Part shown: positions 13,141-61,283 of the stretch, piece after piece
Layout: each line of letters opens with the position of its first letter
Numbering within the stretch: the stretch's first letter is position 1
Source of the DNA: Octopus sinensis
Lineage: Eukaryota
NCBI RefSeq assembly: GCF_006345805.1
Contig: NC_043014.1
Span: 6,386,001-6,450,000 of the forward strand
Length of the DNA stretch: 64,000 nucleotides
Reading direction: 5' to 3'
Notes under the pieces: model-generated
Databases searched by the model: none
What the model was told of the DNA's origin: nothing
The model's input: only the letters and a program-made list of their open reading frames with translations
Program-made: the position numbers and the translations under genes

Positions 13141-13384
13141 CTTCCTGTCCATCACAAAATCGCAGACTGAGCTTTCTTTTTATTTATTTCTGTTTTTTGT
13201 TTGTTGAGTACTTTTTCACTAATTAACTAATTACTTTTTTATCACTTATTAGTTTCATCATATTTCGACAGGAAGAACTATTGCCAAATTTTCTCTAATT
13301 CTTATTTGACCTGGTTCAAATATGTCACGTGGTTACAATGCTTTCGTTCGAGGCAGTCGACGCTCGTTTTCTCTAGCAACCAAC

Positions 13385-13404
13385 ATGGTGACGACGACGA
13401 CGAC

Positions 13405-13435
<31 letters not shown>

Positions 13436-13469
13436 ATATCTGTGATGATTCTTCCATGCTCGTCACTCA
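13385..13469 (+). CDS. Ig-family gene 1, exon 1 (signal peptide MVT5M9IISVMILPCSSL)
   Basis: ATG at 13385 (in-frame upstream ATG at 13322), phase-1 gtaagt donor at 13470. Conserved at the same relative position upstream of all three Ig exons. Confidence 0.75.
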
Positions 13470-13696: not shown

Positions 13697-13744
<48 letters not shown>

Positions 13745-14009: not shown

Positions 14010-14049
<40 letters not shown>

Positions 14050-14960: not shown

Positions 14961-15095
14961 TGGACTAAACATAGAGGGGCCTTATGAGATGGTGCATGGA
15001 CGTGTTTGAGGACGTACGGTCCTCCTTTGCATACCCTCTCTATTCAGGGCCTCACACGTTTCCCCAACACTTCTGTGTAGATAGCAGCATTGACT

Positions 15096-15484: not shown

Positions 15485-16249
15485 GCATTGACTTATACGC
15501 CTTGTGTAAAAAAGGAGAAAGTATAACCTCTCCCTCGTTGTTGATGGCGCCCAGAACTCCGACATTTGCCCTAGAGCTTATTATGCATGGCCATTGGAAC
15601 CTCATTTGGCTCTCTGCGTGACCATCTGTTGTTCCTTCTATTTATCGTTTTTTTTCATCGATTAAAACCAAAGCATTCCAGCCTCTTCGAGCTTTCACTT
15701 GTTTAAGAAGCACTTTGCATGGATCGAACGATTCTCTCTCGTCACAACCGACTTAAGCTGGCCTCTCCGAATCACATACGACTTGTACCGGATGTCCTCA
15801 TGCTCAACATTTTTGATGGGGTATTCTGAAACCTCGAAGTCCTTAGCAATGTATGTGATTGATTTTCAGGATTTTGACTGAATGTTTCTGCAGCTATATT
15901 TTATATAAATTATGTGTTAAGATGGCTATATGATCCAAGCATGCCTTTTGCGATTAGTTCTTTTCGAACTTTGAGAACGAAGAATCGAGCAACTTTCAGG
16001 GCGTGAGCTATCTCTGTATCATTATGCTGTGCTTTTAGGGCTACGATAACAGTGAACCTTTTTATTTTGGGGGTCAGCCTGAAATCTGATATTATTTATC
16101 TTAAAAGTAAGGTAAGCAAAAGAAGACAGAAAAAAGTTACAGCTTTTGAAAGAGGGACCTCAAAATACTAACGCATCCTGAATGTGTGTATGTATGTATG
16201 TATGTATGTATGTATGTATGTATACATGTATGTAGGCATGTATAGATAA

Positions 16250-16345
<96 letters not shown>

Positions 16346-16574
16346 ATCATCAAAGGTAGAATCAACAAAGAAGTGTCCCGTCCAGTGAGAGAAAAATATC
16401 GATTGAATACACAAACCGAAAGAGCTACTTATAGTTTCATGCTTTTATGATACTTGATCAGATAACTTTCGGGTTTCGCGTCTAAAGTAGAAGCGATAAT
16501 TAAATCTGTCTTTGAGAAATTGTTTCCGTCCCATTTTTCGTGTATTCATTCATTGATTTGTTCCTCACTCCTAG

Positions 16575-16907
16575 ATCGTGTTGAAATGACAAGCCTAAAA
16601 CCATTCGAAGGATTTGGGGAAGATGGACCAACTCAAATGAATATAACATGTCACCTTGAAGCAGAAGACTTATCATTCTTCAGACTCAGACGTAACAATG
16701 AAGTCGTTGTTGATATTGGTTTCCACGATGGTATGGGGTTTTTTGAACTTGTTCGTGCTCTGAATGGTTTCGACTGCAACTTACCGCAATCGAGAACAAT
16801 TAATGGAGTATTAAAATGCTGGAAAGAAAATCTAGATTGCGCTGATGCAGGATCCTATACGTGTGAGATATCGGATGCAAAGAGGTCCAAATCAAGGATG
16901 CTAAAAG
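16575..16907 (+). CDS. Ig-family gene 1, exon 2 (V-like Ig domain)
   Basis: ctag acceptor, gttaat donor, 333 nt, phase 1-1. B-strand Cys (NITC) and D.GSYTC F-strand motif. Confidence 0.85.
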
Positions 16908-17010
16908 GTTAATTTTGTTTCATTTTAGGGAGAAAAAAATAGTAACACTCTTACTGCTAATACTACTAACACTACTACTACTTATAATAATAATAATAAT
17001 AATAATATAG

Positions 17011-17400: not shown

Positions 17401-18085
17401 AGAGAAAGAGAAAAAAATAATAATAATAATAAAACAACAACAACAACAACAACAACAATAATAATAATAAAAATAATAATAATAATAAATGCCGTGATGC
17501 AGTACCAGGCAGTGGCTCTCATCGCTTCTGATCTTAACTGGTTGGAAGTGTTATCATGTACATTGTATTATCATGTGTTATCATGTACATTGGTATAAAA
17601 GATGGGCTACAGCAAATATTCTGCTCAATACCACAGATTTGCTTGTCAGTTTTTTTACCGTAACCAGTTGAGCATGTCCCTTAGTGGCTGACGATATGTG
17701 CATCTCTGATCACCATAGCGAGCAAAATGCTTACCGTTATTTCGATCGTTCCAACATTCTGAGTTGAAATACCGTCGAGGTAGATTTGCCTTTTTCCTAC
17801 CCAAGAATATCCGATTTATTAGCTTTGGTGGTTCGGCCAATATGCACTAGAGCGTCCAAAGAATCCCTACATTCGCTCCCCCAGTTATAGCCCTATTCTA
17901 TAGTTTTATAGCTACAAAGATTAGTTGAAGCCCTGGAAACAGTAAACATATTGCATAGTAACATGTCATCTATTTTGATTAATGTTCAAAGTTTTCGTTT
18001 TATATCAACATCGCAATTTGTGTCAAAGCATCCATCCAGTATGTTATTTTGAATCTTATTATCTTAAAATATATTTTCTCTACAG

Positions 18086-18427
18086 TGAAATCTTTTGTCA
18101 AAAGGCTTGACCATATTAATACACCTTTAGAGACGAAGGAGGAGAAGAAGGAGGAGAAGAAGGTGTCTACCTTCAGCTGTTTGGTATATGCTTCTCCAGA
18201 TGCTGACAAAACTGTCACCTTTAGATGGACTGTAAAACATAAGATTAAAAACGCTAAACCACAGATGACAGACAAGAAAATACTTCTTCCGAAAACTGAC
18301 CAACATTGCGTACCAGTACAGTCGCTATTTAAACACGCGGTAACTGATGAAGACAAAAATGGAACAAGTATCTCATGTTCGGCATTTGGGAGAACACTTT
18401 CAGAAGACGTGAATATCTACGGTGCAA
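18086..18427 (+). CDS. Ig-family gene 1, exon 3 (C-like Ig domain)
   Basis: ttttctctacag acceptor, gtaggc donor, 342 nt, phase 1-1. Cys...Trp...Cys pattern (FSC, TFRW, ISC). Confidence 0.8.
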
Positions 18428-19137: not shown

Positions 19138-19257
19138 GATCTGGCAGCCCCATTTCTGCTCTACTACATACAGCATGGTTTTCTGTCTCCAGACTTTCTC
19201 TTCTCTTTCTGGCTCTTGCAAGTTGCCGCTAGCATCATCCCGTTTTTGCTCCAGTAA
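19138..19257 (+). CDS. Ig-family gene 1, exon 4 (hydrophobic/GPI-signal-like tail)
   Basis: ttttttgtctttacag acceptor, phase 1. As written it reads RSGSPISALLHTAWFSVSRLSLLFLALASCR* (stop 19230-19232). One extra T versus gene 2; removing it gives ...WFLSPDFLFSFWLLQVAASIIPFLLQ* ending 19257. Confidence 0.65.
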   Translation, partial: DLAAPFLLYYIQHGFLSPDFLFSFWLLQVAASIIPFLLQ

Positions 19258-23396: not shown

Positions 23397-23449
23397 ATAT
23401 GTCCATATAGATATGAAATTGTTTGTCTATATATTTTATCTCTCGACAG

Positions 23450-23603
23450 GTGTCTCCAGCAACCTGAATGCCTCGACGAAAACCTCAATTTTGAATACCG
23501 TGGTGAAGACACGATGAAAGGAAAGAAGGAACCAATGCCTTGTTGGTTTTTGGCGCGAAGACCCGTTGGACAACTTGAGACATCGTTCGTTTCGGACCCC
23601 TAA
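23450..23603 (+). pseudogene. Duplicated copy of the sGC beta terminal exon (orphan or alternative last exon)
   Basis: Same acceptor context and same 154-nt length as 6358-6511, 14 nt differences, frame open: [50 protein letters not shown]. No upstream sGC exons were duplicated with it. Confidence 0.85.
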
Positions 23604-23659
23604 GACATTCAATTGGACTCTATACATACAACATATACGTGTATTTGTGTGTGTTGTGT

Positions 23660-23742
<83 letters not shown>

Positions 23743-23751
23743 GTGTGTATA

Positions 23752-23796
<45 letters not shown>

Positions 23797-23918
23797 AACA
23801 TGTGTGTAAATCTGGCTGCCGTCAAAATATCCCGGTTTCTTAAAATTAGGACTATATTTGTGAGATCACAGACTGGTTAAGCTGCCCCTAGTATATGGTT
23901 CCAAAAAAGAAAAAAAGA

Positions 23919-23972
<54 letters not shown>

Positions 23973-30793: not shown

Positions 30794-32293
30794 AATGTAT
30801 GTATATATATATATATATATATGTGTATATATATATATATACACGGCGAATGTAGAGACGGACATCTCTACGGTAATGGAGAGCCATCATGTTTGAAAGC
30901 TTTAATTCGTCATTGTTAACTTCATTTGATATTTCCCTAGTCGAAGAAGAGGTTTTGTTCCTGCTTTTGCAGCCGGAGGGTTTCTACAAAAAGCCCTTAA
31001 TATTGGATCAGAAGGCAACTGTACCCAGCCTTTATTTTTGTTTACCCCCATTTTTCCCAGTTATGTATTCCCCAGAATCCCGATTATTCTCTAATTCTGT
31101 CCGTTCCTCTTATACTTTTTCTTGTCCTTCATTCATTTATTCACACTCAAACTGTCACAATTTCTTATTTAACTGCCCCTGACTTAAACAGTCTTCGCTT
31201 TTGTTAATTTCTAACCCTAACCCTTTGCCCTGAGACAATTGGCTTCATTTTCCTCTCCTTCTCTCACTCACACTTGATCCGAACTATTTAATTTCCGACT
31301 CTAAGTCACTCAGCCCAATTTTTCTCACACACTAACTCATCATTTCTTAGCCTCTATCTTCTACGTATTGTGTTTCTCCTCTCAAATCTAGGTCCTCCTT
31401 CTCTTCTTGCGTGATATCTGAATATTCACATAAATAAAAGTTGATATTCTGGATAAATGCATTTAAAATATCAACTTTCGATGCTGCAATTATTCCGATA
31501 TTATTCGTGTTCGTCGTACCTTTATTCAGATTTTTGTACAATATCAGAACAGTCAGATTAGAACAAGGAAACAATTTGTTTCTTTATAGCTTGATGTATC
31601 ACCCTCGTTATTCTCATCCACTCCCCCTATCCTCATCACCATTTGATGTCCCTTTTTATATGATGGCATGGATTGGACGGTTTATCAGGGGCTGGTAAGT
31701 CAGAGGAGTGTGTCATACACCAATGTCTACATTACAATAGTTTCTACAAGTGGATGCTCTGCCTTACTCCAACCACTTTACAAAGTATATTGACGTATTT
31801 GTTGTGGCACCATCTCTAGTGGGGTCACCAATTCTCTGCAAGACAAGGTCCCTCAACGGATTGTCGTAAACCATACATCACTTTCTTAATTATTCTTTAT
31901 AAAAGCAATAATAAAACTTAATACTGATAGGGCACAGAAAGTTTGTCTAAAGCCAGCTGGAGGCGGTGTCCTCCTGGAGCTACAAACTACAGTAGCATCC
32001 CCCCTTAGGGGTTAGCCATATTTAAATGGCAAATATACGTCTTTATAAAATGTAATTTTGAAATAATTTTCTCATTTCACATGAGCTTTCATTTAATTCT
32101 TTCTGTTTTATTTGTTGAGTACTTTTTCATTAATTAACTAATTAATTTTATCACTTATTAGTTTCATCATATTTAGACAGGAAGAACTATTGCCAAATTT
32201 TTTCTAATTCTTATTTGACCTGGCTCAAATATGTCACGTGGTTACAATGCTTTCGTTCGAGGCAGTCGGAGCTCGTTTTCTCTACCAACCAAC

Positions 32294-32323
32294 ATGGTGA
32301 CGACGACGACGACGACGACGATG

Positions 32324-32355
<32 letters not shown>

Positions 32356-32396
32356 GATGATTATATCTGTGATGATACTTCCATGCTCGTCACTCA
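32294..32396 (+). CDS. Ig-family gene 2, exon 1 (signal peptide MVT7M7VM5IISVMILPCSSL)
   Basis: Paralog of 13385-13469, phase-1 gtaagt donor at 32397, upstream in-frame ATG at 32231. Confidence 0.75.
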
Positions 32397-33231: not shown

Positions 33232-35111
33232 GATAAAACGGTAAGATAACAAAGGAAAGAAAGAGACCTCAATATTATGTAAATAGAGGAAATTTATCTA
33301 TACAATATGTTACATTACTCGGTAGTCAAGATAAAACTCTGAGTTTCAGATGCCGAAGTGGAAATCCACAACCCCATCTCTTCGGTTATCTGGCTATTTG
33401 AAAACGTTATGAAAAAATACCGTTAAATAAAGGGAAATTACTCTGTTATTACTCTGCTTGCCTGCGTACTTACACATCGCTCGCATTTTTCGTCATAAAA
33501 ATTATGTAAAAATTATATAAAAATACATAAAAAATATATATAAAAAATATATAAAAATATATAAAAATATATAAATTCTTCTTGTTCTATCTGTTTTCTT
33601 TAGGGGACCAAAAACGTAACAGAAATTTAGTCACATGTGGGCATGATCCGAAAAGCTCTGTCCTTGTATTTAGACATGTAGTAGGGTCTAAGCTGCTTTT
33701 CCAGATAAGCCATCTCTCCATGTCGCATAGACCGCACCTTCCGCTGCCGTTAGTATAGGGCTTACATCTGGCCAAAATCTTCCATTGTATGTTATAATCG
33801 ACACCTTTATCTCTTAAAGACCAAATATGATTAGATAATTGTGTCGCTTTTCTTTTGTTTACGGTAGCTTCATATATGATGGTCTTGGACATGCAAGCTC
33901 CATTTAGCGGGCACAATTCTTTATTCCTGCATGAACAGCTGTTTTCTTCTTGTGTTTTTTGTATGTTATGTTTGATTATGTTTTTAAAATTGGTAGTTGA
34001 ACTAAAACTAATTTTTAAATTGTGTCTATTGAAGAGTTTCCCTATAAGTATAGTTAACTGGAAAATGTCTATCTATCAGTGCTAGGAAATATTTACCTAT
34101 ATTGAAGGCCACCTCGGGTGAGTAAGGGGGCGTAAACCAGATGACCTTCCTTTTTCTATTATTCCTTTTTCCTTACTGTTGGGCTAGTGATAGGTGTATA
34201 TTTTATTTTTTCGCTAAAACCACTATCTTTTAAAGCCTTATTATAAACTGGGGCAACGCTATTGAAGATGTCCTCATCAGATGAGAGGCTAGAAATCCTC
34301 TTACTAATATTTTTAACTAAATTTTTGAATACTATAGGGGGATGGCATGAACCTACATTAATATAACTTAGTCTATCATTGGGCTTCCTATAAGGCTTAT
34401 AAATATTCTTATTAAGATCTAAGGAAACGTCTAAGAAATTGACAACCGTCAGGTTAGTATCTATAGTTATACTAAGTCCGAAGTGTTTCATTAACTGGAT
34501 AATATCCTTCCTAAAACGATCTTGTGCTGGTCCATTTGTATTAGCTGTTAAGGCGAGGGTATCATCTTTGTAGATGGTGAAATGTACGTTAGGGAATGTC
34601 TTACCTAAGGTATCTAGGAGAAAAGGTCCAATTAGATCACAGATGCCTGCCCCATCATATGAACCCATGCTCACATCGAAAGCGCCCTCTGTGTCGGTGT
34701 TTTTTACCCACTTTGCGTTCTCACTGAAAAGTAATGTCTTTCTAGCATGGAAGATTATGTCCTTATCATTGGTACTAATTTCTATGAAGTCACTAGCGAA
34801 GATGAGGGCTTTATCTAGCAGTTCTTTAGAGATAGAGGCATAAAAATCAACAATATCGAATTGTGTAAACCTCGCTTTTTTCTTATTCTTAATAGCATTA
34901 AACCAGTCTACGACTAAATTTCCTCTATTTACATAATATTGAGGTCTCTTTCTTTCCTTTGTTATCTTACCGTTTTATCAATAAATCACCTCCCGGACGA
35001 CGTTATTTTCAACTAAGAGCAGATAACCGAAGAGATGGTGTTGTGGATTTCCACTTCGGCATCTGAAACTCAGAGTTTTATCTTGACTACCGAGTAATGT
35101 TACATATTGTA
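33232..35111 (-). mobile_element. Penelope-like element fragment (RT + GIY-YIG) with terminal inverted segments
   Basis: RT MGSYDGAGICDLIG...YKDD (34159-34674); nuclease region CPLNGAC...IIYEATV...LSNHIWSL...CGLC (33587-33916). Confidence 0.82.
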
Positions 35112-35427: not shown

Positions 35428-35482
<55 letters not shown>

Positions 35483-35483
35483 T

Positions 35484-35579
<96 letters not shown>

Positions 35580-35754
35580 ATAGGCAGACAGACACAACCG
35601 AAAGAGCTACTTATAGTTTCATGTTTTTATGATACTTGATCAGATAACATTCTGGTTTCGCGTCTTAAGTAGAAGCGATAATTAAATCTCTTTGAGTAAT
35701 TTTTTCCGTCCCATTTTTCGTGTATTCAATCATTGATTTGTTCCTCACCCATAG

Positions 35755-36087
35755 ATCATGTTGAAATGACAAGCCTAAAACCATTCGAAGGATTTGGGAT
35801 CAATGGACCAACTCAAATGGATATAACATGTCGTGTTCAAGCAGAAGACTTATTATTCTTCAGACTCAGGCGTAACAATGAAGTCGTTGTTGATATTGGT
35901 TTCAACGATGGTGAAGGAGTCTTTGAAGTAATTCATGACCTGAAAGGTTACTACTGCAACATGCCGCAATCGAGAAAGATTAATGCAGTATTAAAATGCT
36001 GGAAACCAAATCTAGATTGCGGTGATGTAGGATCTTATACGTGTGAGATATCGGATGCAAAGTGGTCCAATTCAAGGAGGCTAAAAG
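35755..36087 (+). CDS. Ig-family gene 2, exon 2 (V-like Ig domain)
   Basis: atag acceptor, gttaat donor, 333 nt, phase 1-1. DITC...DVGSYTC; about 76% aa identity to the gene 1 exon. Confidence 0.85.
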
Positions 36088-37155: not shown

Positions 37156-37273
37156 CCGGAAGGTGCTTGAAAAATAAGGGATGTTACCTTAGTTCACTGG
37201 TAGTGAACAGCTGACACCGTAGTACATCTCCAGCGTCAGAAGCTGTGCAAAGGCAATAATAATAATAATAATA

Positions 37274-37340
<67 letters not shown>
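36130..37340. repeat. (CTA)n/(TAA)n tract with internal ~624-bp duplication
   Basis: The same ~100-bp LINE 3' stub at 36530-36631 and 37154-37254. Confidence 0.85.
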
Positions 37341-39398
37341 TAAACTTTTGGAAAAGGATTTGGAGTGACAAGAAGACGTACAACATAAATGCAGACTGGA
37401 TTATACAAACTGAAGGATCCTACCAAAATTTACAACAACAAGCATGGGAAGACATCACAATAGCAGACCTAAGAAAGGCACTCACGAAGGCCCATAATTG
37501 GAAACCCCCCGGTAAAGATAGGGTGCCGAATTTCTGGCTCGCATCGCTCCCATGCGCACACGGTAAGCTAGTTCAGCTGCTCAATGGAATTATGAGAGAC
37601 CCAAAGAAAACACCTGAATGGTTAGCAAGTGGCATTACTCACCTACTCTCAAAGAATAACGAAACCAACCTTCCAAAAAACTATCGGCCTATAACCTGTC
37701 TATCCACCACGTATAAAATCCTAACATCTATCCTGGCGGAGAAAACATATGCATTCATGGAGAAGAACGATATTTTCCCCATTGAACAAAAAGGGTGCCG
37801 CCGAGGCTCTTACGGATGCAAAGATCAACTGCTAATTAATCGTATGATCCTTGAAAACTGTCACAACAAGTGCAGAAATCTCAGCACCGCATGGATTGAC
37901 TATAAAAAGGCCTTCGACAGTATACCGCATCCTGGATCTTGAGATCGCTGGACATCTTCAAAATTTCCCCTGTGATTTCAAACTTCCTGAAGCACAAATG
38001 TCGTTGTGGAATACGAATCTCCAATTATACCACTCTAATGGAGTACTTGCCTCAGAAAATATAAACATCAACTGTGCAATTTTTCAAGGTGACTCACTTT
38101 CACCTTTAATATTCTGCATAGCCCTAATACCCCTTACAAGTGAATTAAACAGAACAGGGTATGGGTATAAAATTGCCAATAAAAAATAAGCCATCTATTT
38201 TATAGGATGACTTAAAACTTTATGGTAAAGACAATAATGAACTTGAAGGCCTATTGCGCACCGTGAAAGCATTCAGCGATGACATCGGGATGGAGTTTGG
38301 ACTTGAGAAGTGTGCCAAGGCCACTTTCCAGAAAGGGAAAGTGAAGACCACAAATTCAGTCGTGTTAGATGTTGACACAGTCATAAGAGAGCTTGAGCAA
38401 GAACAAACATACAAATATTTAGGGATAAATGAAGGCTCTGGTATTCAGCATGCAAGCATGAAAGAGAAGATCAGGAAGGAATGTTATAGGAGAGTTCGTG
38501 CAGTCCTGAAATCTGAACTAAATGCACGTAACAAGGTGTTAGCTATAAATTCATTAGCAGTTCCAGTTGTTACTTATAGCTACACTGTGTTGAACTGGAA
38601 TATGAGTGAAGTAAAGAATATAGATAGGAAAGTACGCAAGCTGCTGAGTTGTAATAGGATGCACCACCCAAAGGCAGACGTAGATCGCCTTTACCTTCCC
38701 AGAGCCCAAGGAGGTCGAGGCCTGATCCAATTTGAACTAGCTTACAAAACAACCACAATTGGACTGGCCAAATATCTCGAAATATCGAATGACTGGATGC
38801 TAAAGCTCGTGGAAAATCACGAGAGACGAAAGAAGCTTCATTCTATCATAAAGGAAAGCAAAATATTTGCTATTGATCTCGTACAGGATACCCAAACTGA
38901 ACAACCCGAGGGAAGTACGGCAACTATTGTTGCAAAGAAGGTGAAAATGATGGCAACGAATAAAGCGCACGAGCAATTGGCTGATAGGTAGGAGGAGAAA
39001 CCTCTGCACGGCAAATATGTGACCCGCAGCAAACAAGCTGATGTTGACCAGAAGCAAACCCATCAGTGGCTACGGAGCTCAGGGCTAAAAGCAGAGAGCG
39101 AAGGTTTCATCCTGGCTGCTCAAGATCAAAGCCTATTAACCCGGAACTACCAGGCCACTGTGATGAAAAATGGAGCAGATCCAAAATGCCGATTCTGCAA
39201 CGACATGATTGAAACAGTGGACCACCTAATCTCTGACATCATCCTGACATCATCGTTGCCATCCTGAGCCAATCGTTGAAGGTAAAAATGTCAGGATCCT
39301 CTGAGATTTTCCAGTCAACACCGACAGAACGATCCAGGCTAATCGACCAGACATAGTCAATAAAGACAGGGGAGAAAATACTTGTAGACTAATTGACG
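37341..39398 (+). mobile_element. R4/Dong-like REL-endonuclease LINE, truncated and frameshifted, starting at a (TAA)n tract
   Basis: RT motifs NYRPITCL, EQKGCRRGSYGCKDQL, WIDYKKAFDS, FQGDSLSPL; zinc knuckle CRFC...ETVDHL; REL motif TD..IQANRPDIV. Confidence 0.85.
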
Positions 39399-40788: not shown

Positions 40789-41103
40789 TGAAATCTTTTG
40801 TCAAAAGTCTTGATCTTATTAATCCAACTCAGAAGGAGGAGAATGAGACTACCCTCAGATGTTTGGCATATGCTTCATCACATGCTAACAAAACTGTCAC
40901 CTTTAGATGGACTGTAGCAAATAAAAACGCTAAACCACAGATAACAGACAAGAAAGTACCACTTCCGAAAACTGACGATCAGTGCATTCCAGTACAGTCG
41001 CTATATCAACACACGGTAACTGACAAAGACAGCGGTGAAACGATTATTGCATGTTCGGCATTTGGCACCATAATTGCAAAAGAAATGAACGACATTGGTG
41101 CAA
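40789..41103 (+). CDS. Ig-family gene 2, exon 3 (C-like Ig domain)
   Basis: ttttctctacag acceptor, gtaagc donor, 315 nt, phase 1-1. LRC...TFRW...IAC. Confidence 0.8.
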
Positions 41104-41697
41104 GTAAGCAAATATTCTTTTTCTTACATTGTTTAGTGTCCATATTTTCTTTAAAGACATTGGTGTCCCACCTTGGCTGCTGTCCAATAACTGTATCAAG
41201 TAAAATCTAAAAGAAAAACAGATATAGGCAGCAATCGCTGCTACATCGTCTCAAAACCACATTACAAGGCATCAGGCCAAAGAAAGAAACTCATCAATCC
41301 ACACTTCAAACATCACATCAGACATCATATCAAACATCACATCAAACACCACATCAAACTACACCTCAGGCATCACATAAATCAACGCATTGTACATCAC
41401 ATCAAACAACGCAACATACACCGTATCAAACAACGTATCAAACATCACGACAAAACACACCAAACATCACATCAAACTTCATATTATACATCATACCGAA
41501 CATCGCATCAAACCACACGACAAATGTATGAAACCAAACAAGACATCACATCAAACTGCACCACGGTGAATGTTTCGGAAAATATGAAAGCCTCTTAGTG
41601 ACAATAAATGTGAATTCAGTTTCTTTGTCAGACACTAAATCCCATGCTTTGATGCACCAAATATTATTCCAGCCTCCCTGATTTTTTGTCTTTACAG

Positions 41698-41816
41698 TAT
41701 CTGGCAGCACCACTTCTTCTCTACCAGATACAGCATGCTTTCTGTCTCCAAAATTTCCCTTCTCTTTCTGGTTCTTGCAAGTTGCCGCTAGCACCATCCC
41801 GTTTTTGCTCCAGTAA
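41698..41816 (+). CDS. Ig-family gene 2, exon 4 (GPI-anchor-signal-like tail)
   Basis: Phase 1. Reads ISGSTTSSLPDTACFLSPKFPFSFWFLQVAASTIPFLLQ*. Exons sum to 103+333+315+119 = 870 nt, a 289-aa open frame. Confidence 0.72.
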
Positions 41817-43062: not shown

Positions 43063-45440
43063 GATTCATTGATTGATTGATTCTAGTTTCAGCTCACGAG
43101 CTGTGGCCATGCTGGGCACCGCCATTTGGTGTTGCTACATGGTTTTACTTCACGAATGCTTTTTAGCAACTGCCATTTGGTGCATGAGAGAGTTCGATGC
43201 AGCTGCCCTCATCTGAACCTCCTGCCGTGAAGTTGGTTCATCTGGGACACCTGACAGGAAGAGATCCAGTTCATTTTAAGACATCTGCATCCACCCCATG
43301 CAGCTCTTAGGTTCTCGGGAGGATATTGAGAGCTGTGGGCCTCGGAAGCCCAGGCTATCACAGTATCTTGTCCTACATCTTGATGGCAAATTTGAGTTAT
43401 TGGCCCACGCAGTGGCGCCCAGTTCTGGCATGTGTGTAACTCTCGATGCCAAAGTTGGGACAAGTCCTTCCAGGATCTTCCAGATGTATATTATGGCATA
43501 TCTTTCTCGCCTGCGCTCCAAGGAATAGAGTTTTAATCTCTTGAGTCTTTCCCAGTAGCTTATATGCTGCACAGAGGCTATCTTCTTCGTGTAGCTACGT
43601 TGGATCGCTTCAAGGTCTGTGATCAGCTTGGCACTGGATGGTGACCATAGCTGAGAGCAATAGTCAAAATGGCTTAGGGCAAGTGTCCTCCAGAGGACCA
43701 TCATGGTTTCTTGTTCTCTTCTTCTAAAGGTTCTGAGAATCCATCCGGCCAGTCGTCTACATTTCATTGCCAATTTAGCAACATGAACACGAAAGGTTGC
43801 GTCATCACTCATGTAAATACCCAGGTCACGCATTGATTGTGCCTCTGGGATTGCAATTCCTCCAGGTCCAGTGTATTCATTGGGTATTGCATTTAGTTTT
43901 GCATGCTGATAGCATAAAGCTTGAAACTTTTCAGCATTGAACTGCATGCTATTCTTTTCAGCCCACTTGTATATTTTGTCCAGCTCACATTGCAGGCGTT
44001 TAGTGTCCTCAGGGTTCTGTATTGCCTGTGAAACTTTTGTATCATCTGCATAACTTGTGATCGTGGCTCTCTGCGTGGCTGAGGGCATGTCTGAGAGGGC
44101 CATTATGAACAGCAGTGGTCCCAAAACAGTGCCCTGCGGAACACCGCTCACTATTTGCGTGTTAATGAAAGTGGCTCCATTGGCTACTACCAGCTGACTT
44201 CTATCTTTCAGAAAGTCATGAAGCCATCCTCCCCGTTTTCCAACTATGCTAAGATCACGCAGTTTGTGACATATCATTCCATGATCGACTTTATCAAAGG
44301 CCTTTGCAAAGTCGAGATATATCACTTCCACATTTGAGTGGTTGAGCAGTCGTTTCAGCACCCAGTCATAGTGTTGTAGGAGCTGAGTTAAGCAGCTTCT
44401 TCCTGGTCGGAAACCATGTTGGGTGTCAGGCAGCAAGTCATTTTCTTCAAGGAAGGTGATTAGTTTCCTTCTGACTATTCGTTCCATGACTTTGCTGATG
44501 TGTGAGGTCAGAGAGATAGGTCTGTAGTTCTTGGCCTCCGCTCTGCTACCTCCTTTATGAATAGGGCATATTTTACCTTCCTTCAGTTTTCTTGGAAGTT
44601 TGCCAGCTGCAAGGAAGCTCTGAACGGGGAACTGCAGTGGTCTTGCTAGGACTCTCTTACATACTTTTAGAAGGATTGCCGGGAATCCATCGGGGCCAGT
44701 AGCTGAGTCTGTTTTCATTTCATCTATAGCCTTTATTACATCGTCTTCCTTTATATCGATGTAATCTATCGTCGCCGCCTCTGATTTTATATCTGCAGTG
44801 GTAGAGAAGTCAGTTGGATTGGTGATTTGGAAATGCCCAAGGGGTGGAGTGAAAACACTCTTGAATTGCTCATTCAGTATTTCACTTACCCTCATTGGTT
44901 TTCCTGTGAGTGTGCCATCCTTTTCAAGGAGTGGGCCTATCCTACAGTGCACCGTAGCTGTTTCTTTGGCATACCTGTAGAAAGCTCTGGGGTTATAATT
45001 TTATGTTGTCTATAGCCCAGGCTTCTTGTCTGCTCTTTTCCTTTTCATGGGAGAGTTGCAGACATTTTTCAATTTCCAACAGTTTTATTTTCAGGTGGGA
45101 CTTTTCAACAGCTTTCCAATTTGTTTGTTTAGGCGATTGAAATTTTTGTACGCCGTCTCATTAAAATTTTCCTCTCTCTCTGGGGATTTTGTTCTTGGTG
45201 TACAGTGTCCTTTCTCTCTGGGACACATTTGTAGCATATGGCTTGCATTACAGACATGAATTGTTGAAGTTTCACGTCGATGTCTGGCGAGGAGAGACAT
45301 TCAGCAGCCAGTTTTGTTTGAGGATCTCTTTCTCAATTTGTTTCCAGTTTGCCTTATGGAAGTTCAAGCTGGAAAGATTCTGAGGGTTTCTTGTAGGCTG
45401 CATGTCCATGCTTTCCTTTGCCCGTACATGGTCAGCTCTA
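43063..45440 (-). mobile_element. CR1-group LINE with long RT ORF
   Basis: 558-aa ORF 43276-44952 (ATGPDGFPAILLK, NYRPISLTS, YLDFAKAFDKV, GVPQGTVLGPLLF, YADD); (aatc)n tail at ~43063. Confidence 0.93.
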
Positions 45441-52990: not shown

Positions 52991-54946
52991 ATGTGTGTAT
53001 GTGTGTGTGTGAAGAGAGAGACAGGGGGTGAGAGAGAAAAAGGGAGAGAGATGAAAGTAAACATGGAAAAGCAGAACTTTTGGAATCACTTGAAAATCAT
53101 TTATTTTAGAGGAATATAAACTTACAGAGTCTCTTACAGCTGTTTCTAGAATAGCCAAGCATATGGATTTCATAGGCTGAGTATTCCGTCATCAGAGAGG
53201 AAAATGTGAGAGATGTCTAAAATGGGTATTAGTATATTCCAGTTTGTCAAAAGTGAAGGGTGGATCAGAATAAAATAGGTAAAATCCATTAACAGTTTCA
53301 AATGAGAATGCTCGATGATAATCCATGGCGCGGAATGGTGGGTGTTCGAATTCCAATTTTGAACAGGGAAGGAACGAGGGTTGAACAGGGATATTATTCT
53401 CTAGTCAGGAGGAAAGACAGACGGGTGGATGTAGTAGAGTAGATATAAACTAGTTAGTATAGTGGGGGGGGTGCTTATCGAAAGATTTTAAGGGGTGCAT
53501 GTATTAATTTATATATAGACAGATAGATAAAGGGATGAAGAATTGCAGATGTCAGATGCTGTCATTCGTTAAGTGACCACCAACGCTGGCCAGAGTTGGC
53601 TAAAGTGAAAGGGCAGAAAATCCTCTCTATAACTGTATAATTTATTCGGTCATGGAACTACGTAACGTATACAGATATATATGAGGGATTTTCACTCTGT
53701 TTCCGTCGAGAAGGATTTAGTAGGGCGCAGGTCTATAATGGAAGACTCGTGGCCAAAGTGCTGCAAGGTGAAACTGAACCTGAAACACCCGGTTGCAAAC
53801 TGGATCTCTTAAGATTACATCTATGCCTACGCGTTACCCAAGCATCTGTGTTTTGTGTGAGTTTGTGTGTGTGTGCATGTGTGTGCGTGTGTGTGTGTGT
53901 GCGTGTGTGTGCGTGTGTGTGCGTGTGTGTGTGTGTGTGTGTGTTGTGTGTGTGGTGTGTGTGTGTGTGTGAATGTTATTGACTGATAGATCAAAGCGAC
54001 CACAAATCGAAATAGAACACGATATGATTTATAAAAATTGAAGAAAAGTGCACAACAAATACACACCTAACACACACCACCACCCACATATACATAAACA
54101 AACACACACACACACATACACACTCGCACACTCACATTCACACACACACAAACAGAGACACACACACACACACACACAAGCACTTTTATTTACAGATTTA
54201 ATAACATTTTGGCAAAGAATCTCCGTTGACACGATCTCACTGTTTCACTTTCCCGAAGCTAAATCTTTCGAATCCAGACACGCGGTGAACTTTGGAATAC
54301 TTTTCAGAATAGTTCTTTCCAATCTTGTCAATTCCAAAGAGATTTTCTTGAAGAATTTAGCAGCGTTTTCTAAATTCAAAATACTCAGTTTTCGTAAATA
54401 GTGCCAGTGAAGGTAAATATATAAACTGTGTTTTTTTGGGGGGTTTTTTGTTTTGTTTTGTTTCTTAGGCCTTCAAAACCTTTATTACCTCCACCTTCGC
54501 TAAGGCGGAGGTACTGCTTAGAGACGTGTTTGTTTGTTTGTTTATCTGTGGACAAGATATATCAAGAACCGATGGATGGATTCGGATGAAAATTTCAGGA
54601 ATGTTTGACCTCGCGACTGGCACGAACTGATTAAATTTTGGGATCGATTCGGTGCCGGTCAAGGATTCTGGATTATTTACCCTATTTTTTTTTACCTAAT
54701 TTTTGAGAGCGGTCGGGTTCATTTTTAGTATTCTCATTTTAAAAATCATCTCCGGTTAATCGTTGACAGGACGTTGGTGTTGCCTTGGCGGGGTCTGCTC
54801 TCTCAAAGTGCTCTTGTTTTAAATTCACGTCCTTCCAATTTTTAATGAAAGCGCTAAATGTGTCTGAGTGAGTGTGCGCGATCGCGCATTTCCTGGTGTT
54901 TGTGTTGTTTCCCCACTGTCTCTTGGCAACCTTTTTTTTTTTTTTT

Positions 54947-55325
54947 TAGAAGCACTCCGTCGGTTACGACGACGAGAGTTCCGGTTGATCCGAATCAACG
55001 GAACAGCCTGCTCGTGAAATTAACGTGTAAGTGGCTGAGCACTCCACAGACACGTGTACCCTTAACGTAGTTCTCGGGGATATTCAGCGTGACACAGAGA
55101 GGGACAAGGCCGGCCCTTTGAAATACAGGTACAACAGAAACAGGAAGTAAGAGTGAGAGAAAGTTGTGGTGAAAGAGTACAGCAGGGATCGCCACCATCC
55201 CCTGCCGGAGCTTCGTGGAGCTTTAGGTGTTTTCGCTCAATAAACACTCACAACGCCCGGTCTGAGAATCGAAACCGCGATCCTATGACCGCGAGTCCGC
55301 TGCCCTAACCACTGGGCCATTGCAC
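54947..55325 (-). mobile_element. tRNA-derived SINE
   Basis: Homologous to 15096-15484. Confidence 0.85.
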
Positions 55326-56522
55326 CCCTTGGCAACCAATGCTGGCATATTTACGTCCTTGTAACTTAGCGTGCAGTAAAAAGACTGATAACAATAAGTA
55401 CTAGGTTTGAAACAATAAGTACTGGAGTAGTAGAGACTTCTCTGACTCACACTTGATCCGAACTATTTAATTTCCGACTCTAAGTCACTCACCCCAATTT
55501 TTCTCACACACTAACTCATCATTTCTTAGCCTCTATCTTCTACGTATTGTGTTTCTCCTCTCAAATCTAGGTCCTCCTTCTCTTCTTGCGTGATATCGGA
55601 ATATTCACATAAATAAAAGTTGATATTCTGGATAAATGCATTTAAAATATCAACTTTCGATGCTGCAATTATTCCGATATTATTCGTGTTCGTCGTACCT
55701 TTATTCAGACTTTTGTACAAAATCAGAACAGTCAGATTAGAACAAGGAAACAATTTGTTTCTTTATAGCTTGATGTATCACCCTCGTTATTCTCATCCAC
55801 TCCCCCCATCCTCATCACCATTTGATGTCCCTTTTTCCATGATGACATGGATTGGACGGTTCATCAGGGGCTGGTAAGTCAGAGGAGTGAGTCATGCACC
55901 AATGTCTACATTACAATAGTTTCTACAGATGGGTGCTCTGCCTCACTCCAACAACTTTACAGAGTGTATTGATGTATTTTTTTTGGCACCATCTCTAATG
56001 GGGTCACCAATTCTCTGCAAGACAAGGTCCCTCAACGGACTGTCGTAAGCCATACCTCACTTTCATAATTATCTAGTATATATATAAATCACAGTATGCG
56101 TGTGTATATTGACAAACGCATACATTTCCACAATTCTCAACCGATATTCACCAAACTTTACACGCACATTACCTATGTCCAAAAGATGGCCATGCACGGA
56201 AACATTTTGCCAAGAGCTGCTGCGCAAATGGACAAACAAGGAAAAAAACTGTGGTTTACGCGGGGTTTTCTCTAACTCTTTTTATGTACAAATTTCTTTT
56301 TCTTTTTTTGTATGTAGGATCTTCCATACTTTTTTAATCTATATATGGCCGTATATTGGCATTAGAGAATAGTTTTTAGTGATTTTCAATTTTTTTTATT
56401 CATTATTTATTCATATGTTGTAATTGTATATTATTACTTTCCATATTGTTTTTATATGTGTATTGGTGTGTATTGGGCGTTTTGGTTAGAGAATATAAAA
56501 GTGAAAGGATTTCATCTATCTA

Positions 56523-56916: not shown

Positions 56917-57224
56917 TATTTTGTGTGCTTTTCCTACTTTTTTAATCGATAGGAGCCGTATATTTGCATTACAGTATATTTTTTAGTTGTTTTTACATTT
57001 TTTTAATTATTTATTTAGATGTTGTTATGGTGCATTAATACTTTCTATATTCTTATTTGTATGTGCATTGGTCTGTATCGTTTGAGCCTTTCGGTTAAAG
57101 AATATTACAAAAGTGAGAGGATTTTGTCTATTTATTTCGACTGTCCACCTGCGACGATCATTAAATTGACTAGGAACACTGTACGCGATGGATATCCAAC
57201 ACCAAACGATCTTAATCTCTTTAC

Positions 57225-57635
57225 TCTTTACTCTTTTACTTGTTTCAGTCATTTGACTGCGGCCATGCTGGAGCACCACCTTTAGTCGAGCAATTCGACC
57301 CCGGGACTTATTCATTGTAAGCCCAGTACTTATTCTATCGGATTCCCATTTGCCGAACCGCTATGTGACAGGGACGTAAACACACCAGCATCGGTTGTCA
57401 AGCAGTGCTAGGGGGACAAACACAGACACACAAACATACACACAAACACACACATATTTATACATATATACGATGGGCTTCTTTCAGTTTCCGTCTACCA
57501 AATCCACTCACAAGGCATTGGTCGGCCCCAGGCTATAGCAGAAGACACTTGCCCAAGGTGCCACGCAGTGGGACTGAACCCGGAACCATGTGGCTGGTTA
57601 GCAAGCTACTTACCACACAGCCACTCCTGCGCCTA
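57225..57635 (-). mobile_element. Second SINE family copy
   Basis: Reverse complement of the 17011-17400 family, full length. Confidence 0.85.
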
Positions 57636-58449
57636 TATCTCCGGCGCCTAAATCTCCATATTTAATTTGCATTAAATTTTGGCAAGCTTACCTTTACCTA
57701 TTCTGAGTTACTTAAAAGGTGATGTTTCCTTCCATCTTTTCTATTTGGTGATACCTTTGTTTACCAGCCAAAGCGTTGTCACACTTTAAGGATTCTTATT
57801 TACCCATCCGTTATGATATTTCGATTGTTGTCCGTTGTTTCAAATACGTTTTAGCATTGTGGTATTAACCTTTTTTTAAACAATCACAAGAAATTTCGCT
57901 TTCACGTAAAACAACAATATTTTGTAGCCATTACCTATAATCTACTTCTAAAACACTTTAGTAGCTCTACTTAGCATCGTTTGCAAACTTATATATGTTC
58001 TATGATCGTTAAAATGCAACAACCTCCACAATAACCAGCCCTCAATTTGGTGTTCCGTTCCTAGGTTAATCGGAATCATAGATTTCCCTGCTACTCATAA
58101 ACCATCTCGCTTGTTCAATTCTTTGGTGAAAAAATACCACCAAAGCAACTTAAACCTTCCAAAAGGACGGGTTCACCTGCTAGTCCTTCATAAAAGCTAA
58201 TTTTAAAATATTTTTCTCATTTCCGATGAGACTATTTTTTATGATTATTATTATTTTTCTGTTTTGCTTATTTTGCACTTTTTCATTAATTAACTAATTC
58301 ATTTTATCATTAATTAGTTTCATCACATTTCGACACGAAAAACTATTGCCAAATTTTCTCTAATTCTTATTTGACCTCGATCAAATATGTCACGTGGTTA
58401 CAATGCTTCTGTTCGAAGCAGTCGGCGCTCGTTTTCTCTACCAACCAAC

Positions 58450-58531
58450 ATGGTGACGACGACGACGACGATGATGATGATGATGATGATGATGATTATA
58501 TCCGTGATGATTCTTCCATGCATGTCAGTCA
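58450..58531 (+). CDS. Ig-family gene 3, exon 1 (signal peptide MVT5M8IISVMILPCMSV)
   Basis: Third paralog, phase-1 gtaagt donor at 58532, upstream in-frame ATG at 58387. Confidence 0.75.
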
Positions 58532-59829: not shown

Positions 59830-59879
59830 ATATAGATAGTTAGATAGACAGACAGACAGATAGATAGATAGATAGATAT

Positions 59880-59965
<86 letters not shown>

Positions 59966-59966
59966 T

Positions 59967-60047
<81 letters not shown>

Positions 60048-60064
60048 TGACTGACAGACAGACT

Positions 60065-60163
<99 letters not shown>

Positions 60164-60164
60164 T

Positions 60165-60248
<84 letters not shown>
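59830..60248. repeat. (GATA)n/(GACA)n microsatellite
   Basis: Direct reading. Confidence 0.95.
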
Positions 60249-60249
<1 letters not shown>

Positions 60250-60628
60250 GTTTCTTTATTGGCCACACAGGGCTGCACACAAATGGGACAAATTACAAGG
60301 TAGAACTTTTCTTTTGGGGGATGAAAAAAACAAAAAACAAAAGAAACAAAAAAAAGTGGCTTAGGTTTTCGATCAAAAGGGATCGTAAAAGGGAAAAAAG
60401 AAAAAAAAACGAAAAAAAAGGGAAAAAAGGGAAAGAAACAAAAGAAAAGAAAAAGGAAAATAGAAGAAAAAAGAGGAAAAAGGGGAAGAGGAAAAAAACG
60501 ATCAATAGAGATCGTGTATCACAGTGTCATGATGTACGGTGTAAAGGGGGAAGCAGATAAGGTTTATCCGTGGGAAGAAAAGCCTACGAAAAAGACCACG
60601 GTAACCTCGATCAATATTGTTATATTAA

Positions 60629-60717
<89 letters not shown>

Positions 60718-60950
60718 AAGACTCATTCGAGGTAGAATCAACAAAGAAGTGTTCCGTCCAGTGAGAGAAAAATATCGATTTAATACACAAACCGAAAGAG
60801 CTACTTATAGTTTCATGCTTTTATGATACTTGATCAGATAACTTTCGGGTTTCGCGTCTAAAGTAGAAGCGATAATTAAATCTGTCTTTGAGAAATTGTT
60901 TCCGTCCCATTTTTCGTGTATTCATTCATTGATTTGTTCCTCACTCATAG

Positions 60951-61283
60951 ATCGTGTTGAAATGACAAGCCTAACGCCTTTCGATGGATTTGGGGACGAA
61001 GAACTAACCAGAATGGAAATTACATGTAACTTTGTAGCCAACAACTTAGGTTTCTTCAGACTCAGACGAAACGATGAAGTCGTTGTTGATATTGGTTTCC
61101 ACGAAGTTGTGGGAGTTTTTGAAGTCATCTATGCCGCGAAAGATTTCGGTTGCATCTTACCGCGAGTTGCAGCGACTAGAGGTGAATTGCATTGTTGGAA
61201 AAATAACTTGGATTGCAGAGATGTAGCATCTTATACATGTGAGATATCGAATGCAATCGAGTCGAATTCAAGGTTTCTCAAAG
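60951..61283 (+). CDS. Ig-family gene 3, exon 2 (V-like Ig domain)
   Basis: catag acceptor, gttaat donor, 333 nt, phase 1-1. EITC...DVASYTC; about 60% aa identity to gene 1. Downstream exons not found in the window. Confidence 0.85.

What the first reader, a model, noticed from the sequence alone, without database searches (positions are those of the whole stretch)
60730..61283. Mosaic exon: near-identical intron abutting a deeply diverged Ig exon
About 220 bp upstream of exon 2 differ at only 3 positions between gene 1 (~16345-16574) and gene 3 (~60730-60950), and identity continues through the first 8 codons. After that the exons differ at 44 amino acids and 16 further synonymous codons. 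Gene 2 has the more diverged intron but the more similar exon. Inference: gene conversion or unequal crossover with a breakpoint near codon 9 shuffles V domains among paralogs, possibly aided by the (GATA)n tract upstream of every V exon.
Basis: partly seen in the sequence, partly recalled or inferred. Interest (0 to 1): 0.75.

Follow-up and report, generated by a model that had tools for sequence, protein, structure and literature searches.

The report
Intron gene-conversion tract beside octopus Ig exon
In a tandem cluster of fast-evolving octopus Ig-domain surface-protein genes, about 250 bp of intron next to one exon was recently copied from a neighbouring paralog while the exon kept its old, diverged sequence; this is a real but well-known kind of evolutionary mosaic, not shuffling of the Ig domain.

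Summary
Between g1 and g3 there are 3 differences in 221 bp of intron, identity through the first 24 nt of exon 2, then 44 replacement and 16 synonymous-only codon differences.

The window is Octopus sinensis, in a tandem cluster of uncharacterised two-Ig-domain, probably GPI-anchored proteins beside a soluble guanylate cyclase gene. The syntenic O. bimaculoides locus shows that g3's exon 2, exon 3 and intron 2 are orthologous to unit B there. g1 and g2 correspond to unit A.

The intron-1 tract of g3 differs from g1 by 1.4%. The same tract differs by about 10% between species, and g1 and g3 differ by 21-26% in an unconverted control intron. Tree incongruence, an AU test, a GENECONV-style permutation and Fisher tests are all significant.

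The best explanation is a recent short ectopic gene conversion, g1-type into g3. Its 5' end lies within about 10 nt of a (GATA)n array, and its 3' end lies between the splice acceptor and codon 9. The V exon itself was not exchanged, so "V-domain shuffling" is not supported.

This pattern, introns homogenised while exons stay distinct, is known from opsin and MHC genes. Raw reads and the rest of the genome could not be checked.

The parts
60629..60721 (+). (GATA)n / ATAG microsatellite of 23 copies in g3 intron 1. The 5' limit of the near-identical tract lies within about 10 nt of its end.
   Evidence: Tandem Repeats Finder. g1 and g3 are unalignable upstream of the array. Seven differences cluster in the 12 nt just after it.
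60730..60950 (+). Converted tract: the 3' end of intron 1 of g3, which is g1-type sequence.
   Evidence: 3/221 differences from g1 16354-16574, against 22/218 for g1 vs O. bimaculoides unit A and 53/203 for g1 vs g3 in the intron-2 control. The GENECONV-style run test gives p ~5e-5.
60943..60975 (+). Bracket for the 3' end of the conversion tract, from the splice acceptor region to codon 9 of exon 2.
   Evidence: The last site supporting g1 parentage is 60943, and the first sites supporting unit-B parentage are 60947 and 60975. The maximum chi-square breakpoint falls after 60974.
60951..61283 (+). g3 exon 2: 333 nt, phase 1-1, the first V-like Ig domain. It is part of NCBI LOC118766832 and was not converted.
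   Evidence: Translation. It matches P0004/P0006. It differs from O. bimaculoides unit B at 36/309 sites and from g1 at 84/309. Tree support for (g3, unit B) is 100/100, and the AU test rejects a g1+g3 clade at p = 1.8e-6.
16242..16344 (+). (GATA)n array of g1, 26 copies.
16354..16574 (+). g1 intron-1 3' segment, the probable donor-type sequence.
   Evidence: The segment is A-type: it is 10% from O. bimaculoides unit A and 6.8% from g2.
16575..16907 (+). g1 exon 2 (LOC118766831), Ig domain 1.
35428..35583 (+). (GATA)n array of g2, 39 copies.
35592..35754 (+). g2 copy of the intron segment, 6-7% diverged from g1 and g3.
35755..36087 (+). g2 exon 2.
58387..58531 (+). g3 exon 1: signal peptide with a poly-Thr/poly-Met run and an intact GTAAGT donor.
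13322..13469 (+). g1 exon 1.
18086..18421 (+). g1 exon 3 (Ig domain 2). Together with its upstream intron (about 17860-18085) it serves as the unconverted control.
40789..41097 (+). g2 exon 3.
19138..19232 (+). g1 exon 4: a hydrophobic C-terminal tail that looks like a GPI-anchor signal.

Best explanation
The region is the 3' end of intron 1 and exon 2 of g3. g3 is the third unit in a tandem cluster of octopod-restricted genes in Octopus sinensis. Each unit has four exons: a signal peptide, Ig-like domain 1, Ig-like domain 2, and a hydrophobic tail that looks like a GPI-anchor signal. The g1-type and g3-type units split before O. sinensis and O. bimaculoides diverged. A recent short ectopic (interlocus) gene conversion then copied g1-type sequence into g3. 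The tract is at least 214 bp (60730-60943) and at most about 346 bp (60629-60974). It replaced g3's own intron sequence from next to the (GATA)n array to the start of exon 2, and it left the Ig exon untouched. Shown here: the tract, its bounds, the incongruence with the exon, the orthology of the exon, and the donor type. Inferred: the mechanism. A plausible route is a break at or near the fragile microsatellite, followed by invasion of the paralog using the near-perfect GATA array as homology. Synthesis would then run through the intron, and the strand would re-anneal at the conserved acceptor-proximal 49 nt plus the invariant first 24 nt of the exon. Either the 27% divergence further into the exon stopped the tract, or selection removed tracts that homogenised the Ig domain. 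Exon-1 and exon-4 regions give moderate evidence of similar homogenisation across the cluster, whereas exon 2, intron 2 and exon 3 keep orthology.
For: Identity of the locus: g1 matches O. sinensis LOC118766831 at 100%. The O. bimaculoides locus is syntenic, with the same upstream guanylate cyclase gene and collinear flanks tying g3 to unit B and g1/g2 to unit A. Intron tract divergences: g1-g3 3/219, g1-unit A 22/218, g3-unit A 19/218, g1-g2 11/161. Exon divergences: g3-unit B 36/309, g1-g3 84/309. dS is about 0.5 for g1-g3 and about 0.2 for orthologs. The exon tree is ((g3,B)100,(A,(g1,g2))100), and the AU test rejects g1+g3 at p = 1.8e-6. Control: in intron 2 next to exon 3, g1 and g3 differ at 34/165 to 53/203 sites and g3 groups with unit B at 98/98. 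Fisher's test against this control gives p = 1.6e-15. The relative-divergence Fisher test gives p = 3.5e-6. In the GENECONV-style permutation only the g1-g3 pair is significant, at p ~5e-5. Direction: the shared sequence is close to unit A and to g2. The only B-type intron sequence available, the last 40 nt, differs from g3 at 11/40 sites, whereas g3 differs from unit A at 2/40. The segment occurs only at exon-2 acceptors, so it is not a dispersed repeat within the roughly 200 kb examined. The exon-1 region groups by species at 91-94% support, and the exon-4 region rejects g3+B orthology at p = 0.04.
Against: Only one assembly of one individual was available, and no raw reads, second individual or sister-species locus could be examined. 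O. bimaculoides unit B has lost most of intron 1, so the original B-type version of the tract is known only for its last 40 nt or so. The intron four-taxon tree is a star with no resolved internal branch, so the case rests on distances and run tests, not on a supported intron clade. The break-repair mechanism and the role of the microsatellite are inferred from where the boundaries lie. Evidence for homogenisation of the exon-1 region is only moderate (AU p = 0.09).
Confidence: 0.8

Rival explanations
1. There was no exchange. The intron segment is a functional element, such as a splicing or regulatory element or an intronic RNA, held nearly constant by purifying selection while the exon diverges fast.
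For: The last 49 nt or so of the intron and the first 24 nt of the exon are conserved in all unit types in both species. Intron 3' ends are about half as diverged as synonymous sites.
Against: The same segment differs by 9-10% between species and by 6-7% from g2. Unit B, g4 and g5 lack it apart from the last 40-49 nt. There is no Rfam match, and its RNA fold is ordinary at z = -0.8. Constraint cannot make g3 carry A-type sequence.
Confidence: 0.03
2. It is an assembly or polishing artefact: the g3 intron was overwritten or chimerically joined with g1 sequence.
For: The tract is flanked by microsatellites, which are hard to assemble. The cluster assembly is imperfect: a C-type unit sits on an unplaced scaffold, and g2 exon 4 has a 1-nt indel in a T run.
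Against: Both copies are present with different flanks and still differ at 3 sites. An artefact would need two switches within about 350 bp. Short-read polishing could not cross-map between sequences about 20% apart. The window and the independently fetched GenBank record are identical.
Confidence: 0.04
3. An unequal crossover in intron 1 made g3 a hybrid gene, with the g1 5' half joined to the B-type 3' half.
For: Tandem arrays undergo unequal crossover. g2 looks partly hybrid, since its promoter block is 95.8% identical to g3's while its exons 2-4 are A-type.
Against: Upstream of the array g1 and g3 do not align, and their exon-1 regions differ by 9.7%. The identity is an island, not a half-gene.
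Confidence: 0.03
4. The copying was replication-based template switching at the microsatellite (FoSTeS/MMBIR type), not break-repair gene conversion. The outcome is the same but the mechanism differs.
For: The 5' junction is next to a microsatellite, and a cluster of 7 changes lies in the 12 nt at the junction.
Against: Nothing distinguishes the two here. There are no templated insertions or microhomology scars beyond the junction cluster, and array-flank slippage could also explain that cluster.
Confidence: 0.08
5. The exon is the part that moved. On this view g3 was a young copy of g1 whose exon 2 was replaced by a diverged V exon, which would be true V shuffling.
For: In principle this would give the same two-segment pattern.
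Against: Collinear intergenic flanks on both sides, intron 2 and exon 3 of g3 are all orthologous to unit B. Only the 245-nt island is g1-like.
Confidence: 0.02

Closest known systems
Intron homogenisation by gene conversion between primate L and M opsin genes
   Same: In tandem paralogs, introns are much more similar than exons. Exon trees keep the old duplication while intron trees look recent. GENECONV tracts fall mostly in introns, and selection is thought to remove tracts that would homogenise functional exons (PMC3213168).
   Different: Here the evidence is one sharp young tract in one genome, not population data. The exon is a fast-evolving Ig domain (dN/dS 0.5-1.3), not a domain held by purifying selection on a few tuning sites. 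One tract boundary lies at a microsatellite.
MHC class I/II genes: young or homogenised introns beside old, diversified exon 2 (from general knowledge, not tested here)
   Same: Recombination or conversion in the flanking introns is decoupled from an Ig-fold-related exon that retains deep lineages.
   Different: In MHC the contrast is mostly between alleles under balancing selection. Here it is between paralogs, and no polymorphism data exist.
Biomphalaria FREPs and chicken Ig pseudo-V gene conversion (from general knowledge)
   Same: These are Ig-superfamily genes in tandem families, with gene conversion invoked.
   Different: In those systems the tracts fall inside the V coding sequence and create diversity, somatically in both cases. 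Here the coding V sequence was not exchanged, and nothing is known about somatic variation.
Two-Ig-domain (V-like plus C-like) cell-surface proteins such as butyrophilin ectodomains, neurotrimin and antibody light chains
   Same: The predicted fold has two all-beta Ig-like domains, and Foldseek top hits reach E 1e-6 to 1e-4. The family has conserved Cys...Trp...D-x-x-x-Y-x-C motifs and phase 1-1 domain exons.
   Different: Sequence similarity is negligible: Pfam Ig_2 E 0.1-0.2, below threshold, and PDB titin Ig E 0.002. The family is restricted to octopods (Octopus, Argonauta), with only 38 representative clusters among 1.84 billion proteins.

Membership tests
Interlocus (ectopic) gene conversion tract | A discrete island of raised identity between paralogs, with lower identity on both sides | tested here: met
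   245 nt with 3 differences. Upstream of the array the copies are unalignable, and 27% of sites differ downstream.
Interlocus (ectopic) gene conversion tract | The tract and its flanks give incongruent histories when orthologs from another species are included | tested here: met
   Exon 2, intron 2 and exon 3 group g3 with O. bimaculoides unit B. In the tract g3 is 1.4% from g1, against 9-10% between species.
Interlocus (ectopic) gene conversion tract | Statistical support from a run or permutation test conditioned on variable sites | tested here: met
   A run of 18 concordant variable sites, p ~5e-5, and no other pair is significant.
Interlocus (ectopic) gene conversion tract | Confirmed in raw reads or independent individuals, so not an assembly artefact | not testable with these tools
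Immunoglobulin-superfamily domain | Passes a curated Ig profile threshold | tested here: not met
   Pfam Ig_2 scores 12-13 bits against a cut-off of 27.
Immunoglobulin-superfamily domain | Ig-like beta-sandwich fold with the conserved Cys pair, Trp and Y-x-C motif | tested here: met
   Invariant C75, W132, D140, Y144 and C146 in domain 1, and the equivalent residues in domain 2. The AF2 domain cores have pLDDT 65-81, and Foldseek hits are Ig V+C chains. Confidence is moderate.
V-region diversification by gene conversion (FREP-like or chicken-Ig-like) | Conversion tracts inside the V coding sequence | tested here: not met
   The informative-site scan and run test show no exchanged segment within any exon 2. 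The exon trees follow orthology.
V-region diversification by gene conversion (FREP-like or chicken-Ig-like) | Somatic or individual-level variation of V sequences | not testable with these tools
   Only a single assembly was available.
Dscam-like mutually exclusive splicing with docking and selector RNA pairing | A conserved intronic selector upstream of each variable exon that is complementary to a docking site | tested here: not met
   Only short, imperfect inverted matches of 14-22 nt at 75-88% between the exon-1 downstream intron and the segment. The segment is absent from several units.
Variable-cassette plus shared constant exon cluster (protocadherin/UGT1-like) | Several variable units spliced to one shared 3' exon | tested here: inconclusive
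   O. bimaculoides isoforms X1 and X2 share unit B's exon 4. The O. sinensis model joins g2 exon 1 to g3 exons 2-4. However, g1, g2, g3 and g5 each have their own exon 4. No transcript data were available.

The most novel reading that the evidence does not exclude
The cluster may be an octopod-specific, rapidly diversifying surface-recognition repertoire. On this reading, recurrent conversion keeps promoter, signal-peptide, acceptor-proximal intron and anchor parts interchangeable, while selection keeps the Ig exons distinct. Transcripts could then splice exon 1 of one unit to the V exon of another, as two RefSeq models suggest. The homogenised acceptor-proximal intron would be a shared splice-choice element, and the locus would generate combinatorial receptor isoforms.
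Probability: 0.07. Interest if true: 0.7.

Novelty: new member of a known kind. Interest (0 to 1): 0.3.

Why it matters
This is a clean, datable example of short-tract ectopic gene conversion in a cephalopod genome, with one boundary at a microsatellite and the other at an exon edge. It also shows that tandem Ig-domain genes in octopus evolve as mosaics: the Ig exons keep deep orthologous lineages and evolve fast, with dN/dS up to about 1.3, while the surrounding parts are exchanged. In practice, intron or flank similarity would mislead orthology calls and duplication dating in this cluster. The finding also flags an uncharacterised octopod-restricted Ig family as a candidate recognition-molecule family. 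It does not reveal a new diversification mechanism.

Tried and rejected
- A protein search with the 108-aa exon ORF, meant to find the exon in independent assemblies, found nothing.
- A two-unit concatenated query, meant to catch fused O. vulgaris models, found only a distant O. sinensis paralog.
- The O. vulgaris locus L003 turned out to be a distant paralog cluster that does not overlap this one.
- The O. vulgaris models P0009 and P0010 are distant multi-repeat relatives, and the gene range of P0009 was too long for DNA to be returned.
- L005 was first hoped to be an alternative haplotype, but it is a further paralog of the C type.
- I considered whether the g1-g2 intron 2 had been homogenised. 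A post-speciation duplication with an accelerated g2 explains it without any exchange.
- The near-zero g1/g3 branch in the intron star tree looked odd. It is explained once the O. sinensis stem is seen to be folded into the unit A branch.
- The structured-RNA and Dscam-like pairing ideas found no support.
- The 96% block 15095-15478 ~ 54944-55326 is a dispersed SINE-like repeat, not a conversion.

Full report
**What is there.** The window is eukaryotic DNA rich in microsatellites, SINE-like repeats and LINE reverse-transcriptase ORFs. A self-comparison shows three tandem paralogous units. Each unit contains a 333-nt, phase 1-1 exon:

| Unit | Exon 2 coordinates |
|---|---|
| g1 | 16575-16907 |
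| g2 | 35755-36087 |
| g3 | 60951-61283 |

The exon encodes a domain with Ig hallmarks (Cys...Trp...D-x-x-x-Y-x-C).

A protein search identifies g1 as Octopus sinensis LOC118766831 at 100% identity, and g3's exon as part of LOC118766832. The gene model has four exons:
- a signal peptide with a poly-Thr/poly-Met run
- Ig-like domain 1
- Ig-like domain 2
- a short hydrophobic C-terminal tail typical of a GPI-anchor signal

Pfam Ig models match only below threshold, and PDB sequences match only weakly (titin Ig, E = 0.002). An AlphaFold model gives two all-beta domains with core pLDDT 65-81 and mean pLDDT 52. Its Foldseek hits are two-domain Ig chains: antibody light chains, butyrophilins, TCR chains and neurotrimin. 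The family has only 38 representative clusters among 1.84 billion proteins. The named clusters I looked up come from Octopus and Argonauta, with one weak match in a bivalve. I found no paper describing the family.

**Checking the observation.** g1 16354-16574 and g3 60730-60950 differ at 3 of 221 positions. Identity continues through the first 24 nt of the exon. g2 is intermediate in the intron (11/161 vs g1) and closer in the exon (40/309). Fisher's test of 3/243 against 84/309 gives p = 4e-20.

**Bringing in another species.** The orthologous O. bimaculoides locus (L002) has the same upstream soluble guanylate cyclase gene and three units, A, B and C. Collinear intergenic matches tie g3 to unit B and g1/g2 to unit A. 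L004 extends the O. sinensis sequence 14.7 kb beyond the window. It supplies g3's exons 3 and 4 and a diverged fourth unit, g4. A fifth unit, g5, of the C type, lies on an unplaced scaffold.

*The exon follows orthology.* The exon 2 tree is ((g3,B) 100/100, (A,(g1,g2) 98/96) 100/100). The AU test rejects a g1+g3 clade at p = 1.8e-6. With g5 and the partial unit C sequence added, the A-type and C-type groups hold at 100/99, while (g3,B) drops to 58/40. Synonymous divergence is about 0.5 for g1-g3 and about 0.2 for orthologs. The two exon types therefore predate the species split.

*The intron tract does not.* The relevant divergences are:

| Comparison | Intron-1 tract | Rest of exon 2 | Intron-2 control (3' end) |
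|---|---|---|---|
| g1 vs g3 | 3/219 (1.4%) | 84/309 (27%) | 34/165 to 53/203 (21-26%) |
| g1 vs unit A | 22/218 (10%) | 50/309 (16%) | 13/167 |
| g3 vs unit A | 19/218 (8.7%) | 78/309 (25%) | not extracted |
| g3 vs unit B | not alignable | 36/309 (11.7%) | 14/165 |

*The control.* The 3' end of intron 2, next to exon 3, shows what an unexchanged intron looks like for these genes. Its tree groups g3 with unit B at 98/98. Against this control the intron-1 tract is anomalous at p = 1.6e-15. A relative-divergence Fisher test gives p = 3.5e-6. A GENECONV-style permutation over variable sites singles out g1-g3, with a run of 18 concordant sites at p ~5e-5, and no other pair is significant.

**Boundaries and direction.**
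- *5' end:* identity starts at 60730. That is about 10 nt after a 23-copy (GATA)n array (60629-60721), and upstream of the array g1 and g3 do not align.
- *3' end:* informative sites switch from g1-type to B-type between 60943 and 60975, and the maximum chi-square breakpoint falls after 60974. The switch cannot be placed more finely, because the first 24 nt of the exon are the same in g1, g3 and unit B and nearly so in the other copies.
- *Direction:* the shared sequence is A-type, close to unit A and to g2. The only surviving B-type intron sequence, the last 40 nt in unit B, differs from g3 at 11/40 sites. So a g1-type donor converted g3.
- *Unit B's short intron:* a g1 segment (13685-13885) has a g3 homolog (60190-60409) at 83% in the same relative position. 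This shows that g3's long intron 1 is ancestral and that unit B's 125-bp intron is a deletion.
- *Age:* the tract's divergence is about 12% of the interspecies value for the same segment, so the event is recent relative to the species split.

**Wider pattern.** The exon-1 region groups all O. sinensis units apart from all O. bimaculoides units at 91-94% support. That includes g4, whose V exon is only 36-40% identical to the others at the protein level. The AU test does not reject g3+B there (p = 0.09). In the exon-4 region units B and C group together at 100/99, g2-g3 differ by only 4.8%, and g3+B orthology is marginally rejected (p = 0.04). A promoter-proximal block is 95.8% identical between g2 and g3, against 90% for g3 vs unit C. 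The cluster is therefore a patchwork. The Ig-exon core (exon 2, intron 2, exon 3) keeps orthology while the unit ends are exchanged. The Ig exons evolve fast, with dN/dS of 0.45-0.9 in exon 2 and up to 1.35 in exon 3.

**Mechanism.** Shown here: a short non-reciprocal copy of g1-type intron sequence into g3.

Inferred: the event was break repair, or template switching, that started at the microsatellite. The near-perfect arrays would have provided homology for invasion. The copy would have resolved at the conserved acceptor-proximal 49 nt plus the invariant 24 nt of the exon. Further extension was either blocked by the 27% divergence or removed by selection against homogenising the Ig domain. 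One event cannot separate these two possibilities.

**Rivals.**
- *Pure constraint on an intronic element* fails. The segment varies by 6-10% in other comparisons, is missing from units B, g4 and g5 apart from the last 40-49 nt, and shows no RNA-family match or unusual fold.
- *A single unequal crossover* fails because the identity is an island.
- *Movement of the V exon* fails on synteny and on the intron-2 control.
- *A dispersed repeat* is unlikely, since the segment occurs only at exon-2 acceptors in the roughly 200 kb examined.
- *An assembly artefact* is unlikely. The two copies have different flanks and three differences, and an artefact would need two switches within 350 bp. It could not be excluded without reads.

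**Comparison with known systems.** The pattern closely matches intron homogenisation by gene conversion between primate L and M opsin genes. There exon trees keep the old duplication, intron trees look recent, and GENECONV tracts lie mostly in introns (PMC3213168). From general knowledge it also matches the young introns beside old exon 2 lineages in MHC genes. It does not match V-region diversification by conversion, as in FREPs or chicken Ig, because no tract lies within the V coding sequence. No Dscam-like docking or selector pairing was found.

**Verdict.** It is wrong on the main biological claim, because V domains are not being shuffled. This is a new example of a known phenomenon, in an uncharacterised octopod-restricted Ig gene family.

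Noticed in passing
window 32231 (g2 exon 1) to L004 46480 (window-equivalent 68710); L002 10001-23300: The RefSeq model LOC118766832 joins g2's exon 1 to g3's exons 2-4, skipping g2's exons 2-4 and g3's own intact exon 1. O. bimaculoides LOC106878953 isoform X2 joins unit A's exons 1-3 to unit B's exon 4. This is either cross-unit splicing or an annotation artefact.
   Followed up: partly
window about 41697-41790 (g2 exon 4): g2's exon 4 has a 1-nt deletion in a T run relative to g1 and g3, which shifts the frame of the hydrophobic tail. g2 may be a decaying copy, or this may be an assembly indel. g2 also has much longer branches than g1 in introns (0.044-0.066 vs 0.006-0.008).
   Followed up: partly
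window 31258-31893 and 55437-56072: A promoter-proximal block is 95.8% identical between g2 and g3, more similar than g3 is to its best O. bimaculoides match (90%). It is found only upstream of exon 1 copies. It may be a second exchange tract, and g1 lacks the block.
   Followed up: partly
window 18086-18421 and 40789-41097 (exon 3): Ig domain 2 has pairwise dN/dS of 1.2-1.35 in several comparisons. g1 and g2 differ by 19% in this exon but by only 5% in the adjacent intron, which suggests positive selection or loss of constraint.
   Followed up: partly
window 6305-6893 and 23397-23972; guanylate cyclase exon ORF 1678-2154: The 3' end region of the neighbouring soluble guanylate cyclase gene is duplicated along with the unit (79% identity, period about 17 kb). 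The recorded gene range for the cyclase runs to about window 23603, which would nest g1 inside it.
   Followed up: no
L005 (O. sinensis unplaced scaffold VCDQ01003523.1) 899-14402: A fifth unit, LOC118761863, is the ortholog of O. bimaculoides unit C. It sits on an unplaced 33-kb scaffold, so the chromosome-level assembly of this cluster is incomplete or the unit varies between haplotypes.
   Followed up: partly
window 13385-13440, 32290-32370, 58450-58500 (within the exon 1 copies): The signal peptide contains a poly-Thr then poly-Met run encoded by trinucleotide repeats, and its length differs among all units and both species.
   Followed up: no
window 60902-60974 and equivalents in g1, g2, g5 and units A and B: The last 49 nt or so of intron 1 and the first 24 nt of exon 2, including their synonymous positions, are conserved across all unit types in both species. 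This may be a splice-related element.
   Followed up: partly
window 59832-60248: A very large ATAG/GATA-type array of about 105 copies lies in g3 intron 1, about 400 bp upstream of the smaller array that bounds the tract. g1 has an (ATGT)n array (16182-16243) abutting its GATA array, and g5 has a long (ATGT)n array at the equivalent place.
   Followed up: no
window 20455-22135 (-), 37223-39267 (+), 43276-45000 (-), 34159-34974 (-): LINE-type reverse-transcriptase ORFs are inserted between and within units. SINE-like repeats (for example 17005-17414, 57220-57638, 15095-15478 and 54944-55326) account for several high-identity blocks that are not paralogous.
   Followed up: no
O. vulgaris proteins P0009 and P0010 (no DNA fetched): Distant family members in O. 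vulgaris are long proteins made of repeated V-like plus C-like Ig pairs separated by Thr/Pro-rich mucin-like linkers. The family therefore also exists in a multi-repeat form, or these are fused gene models spanning up to 173 kb.
   Followed up: no
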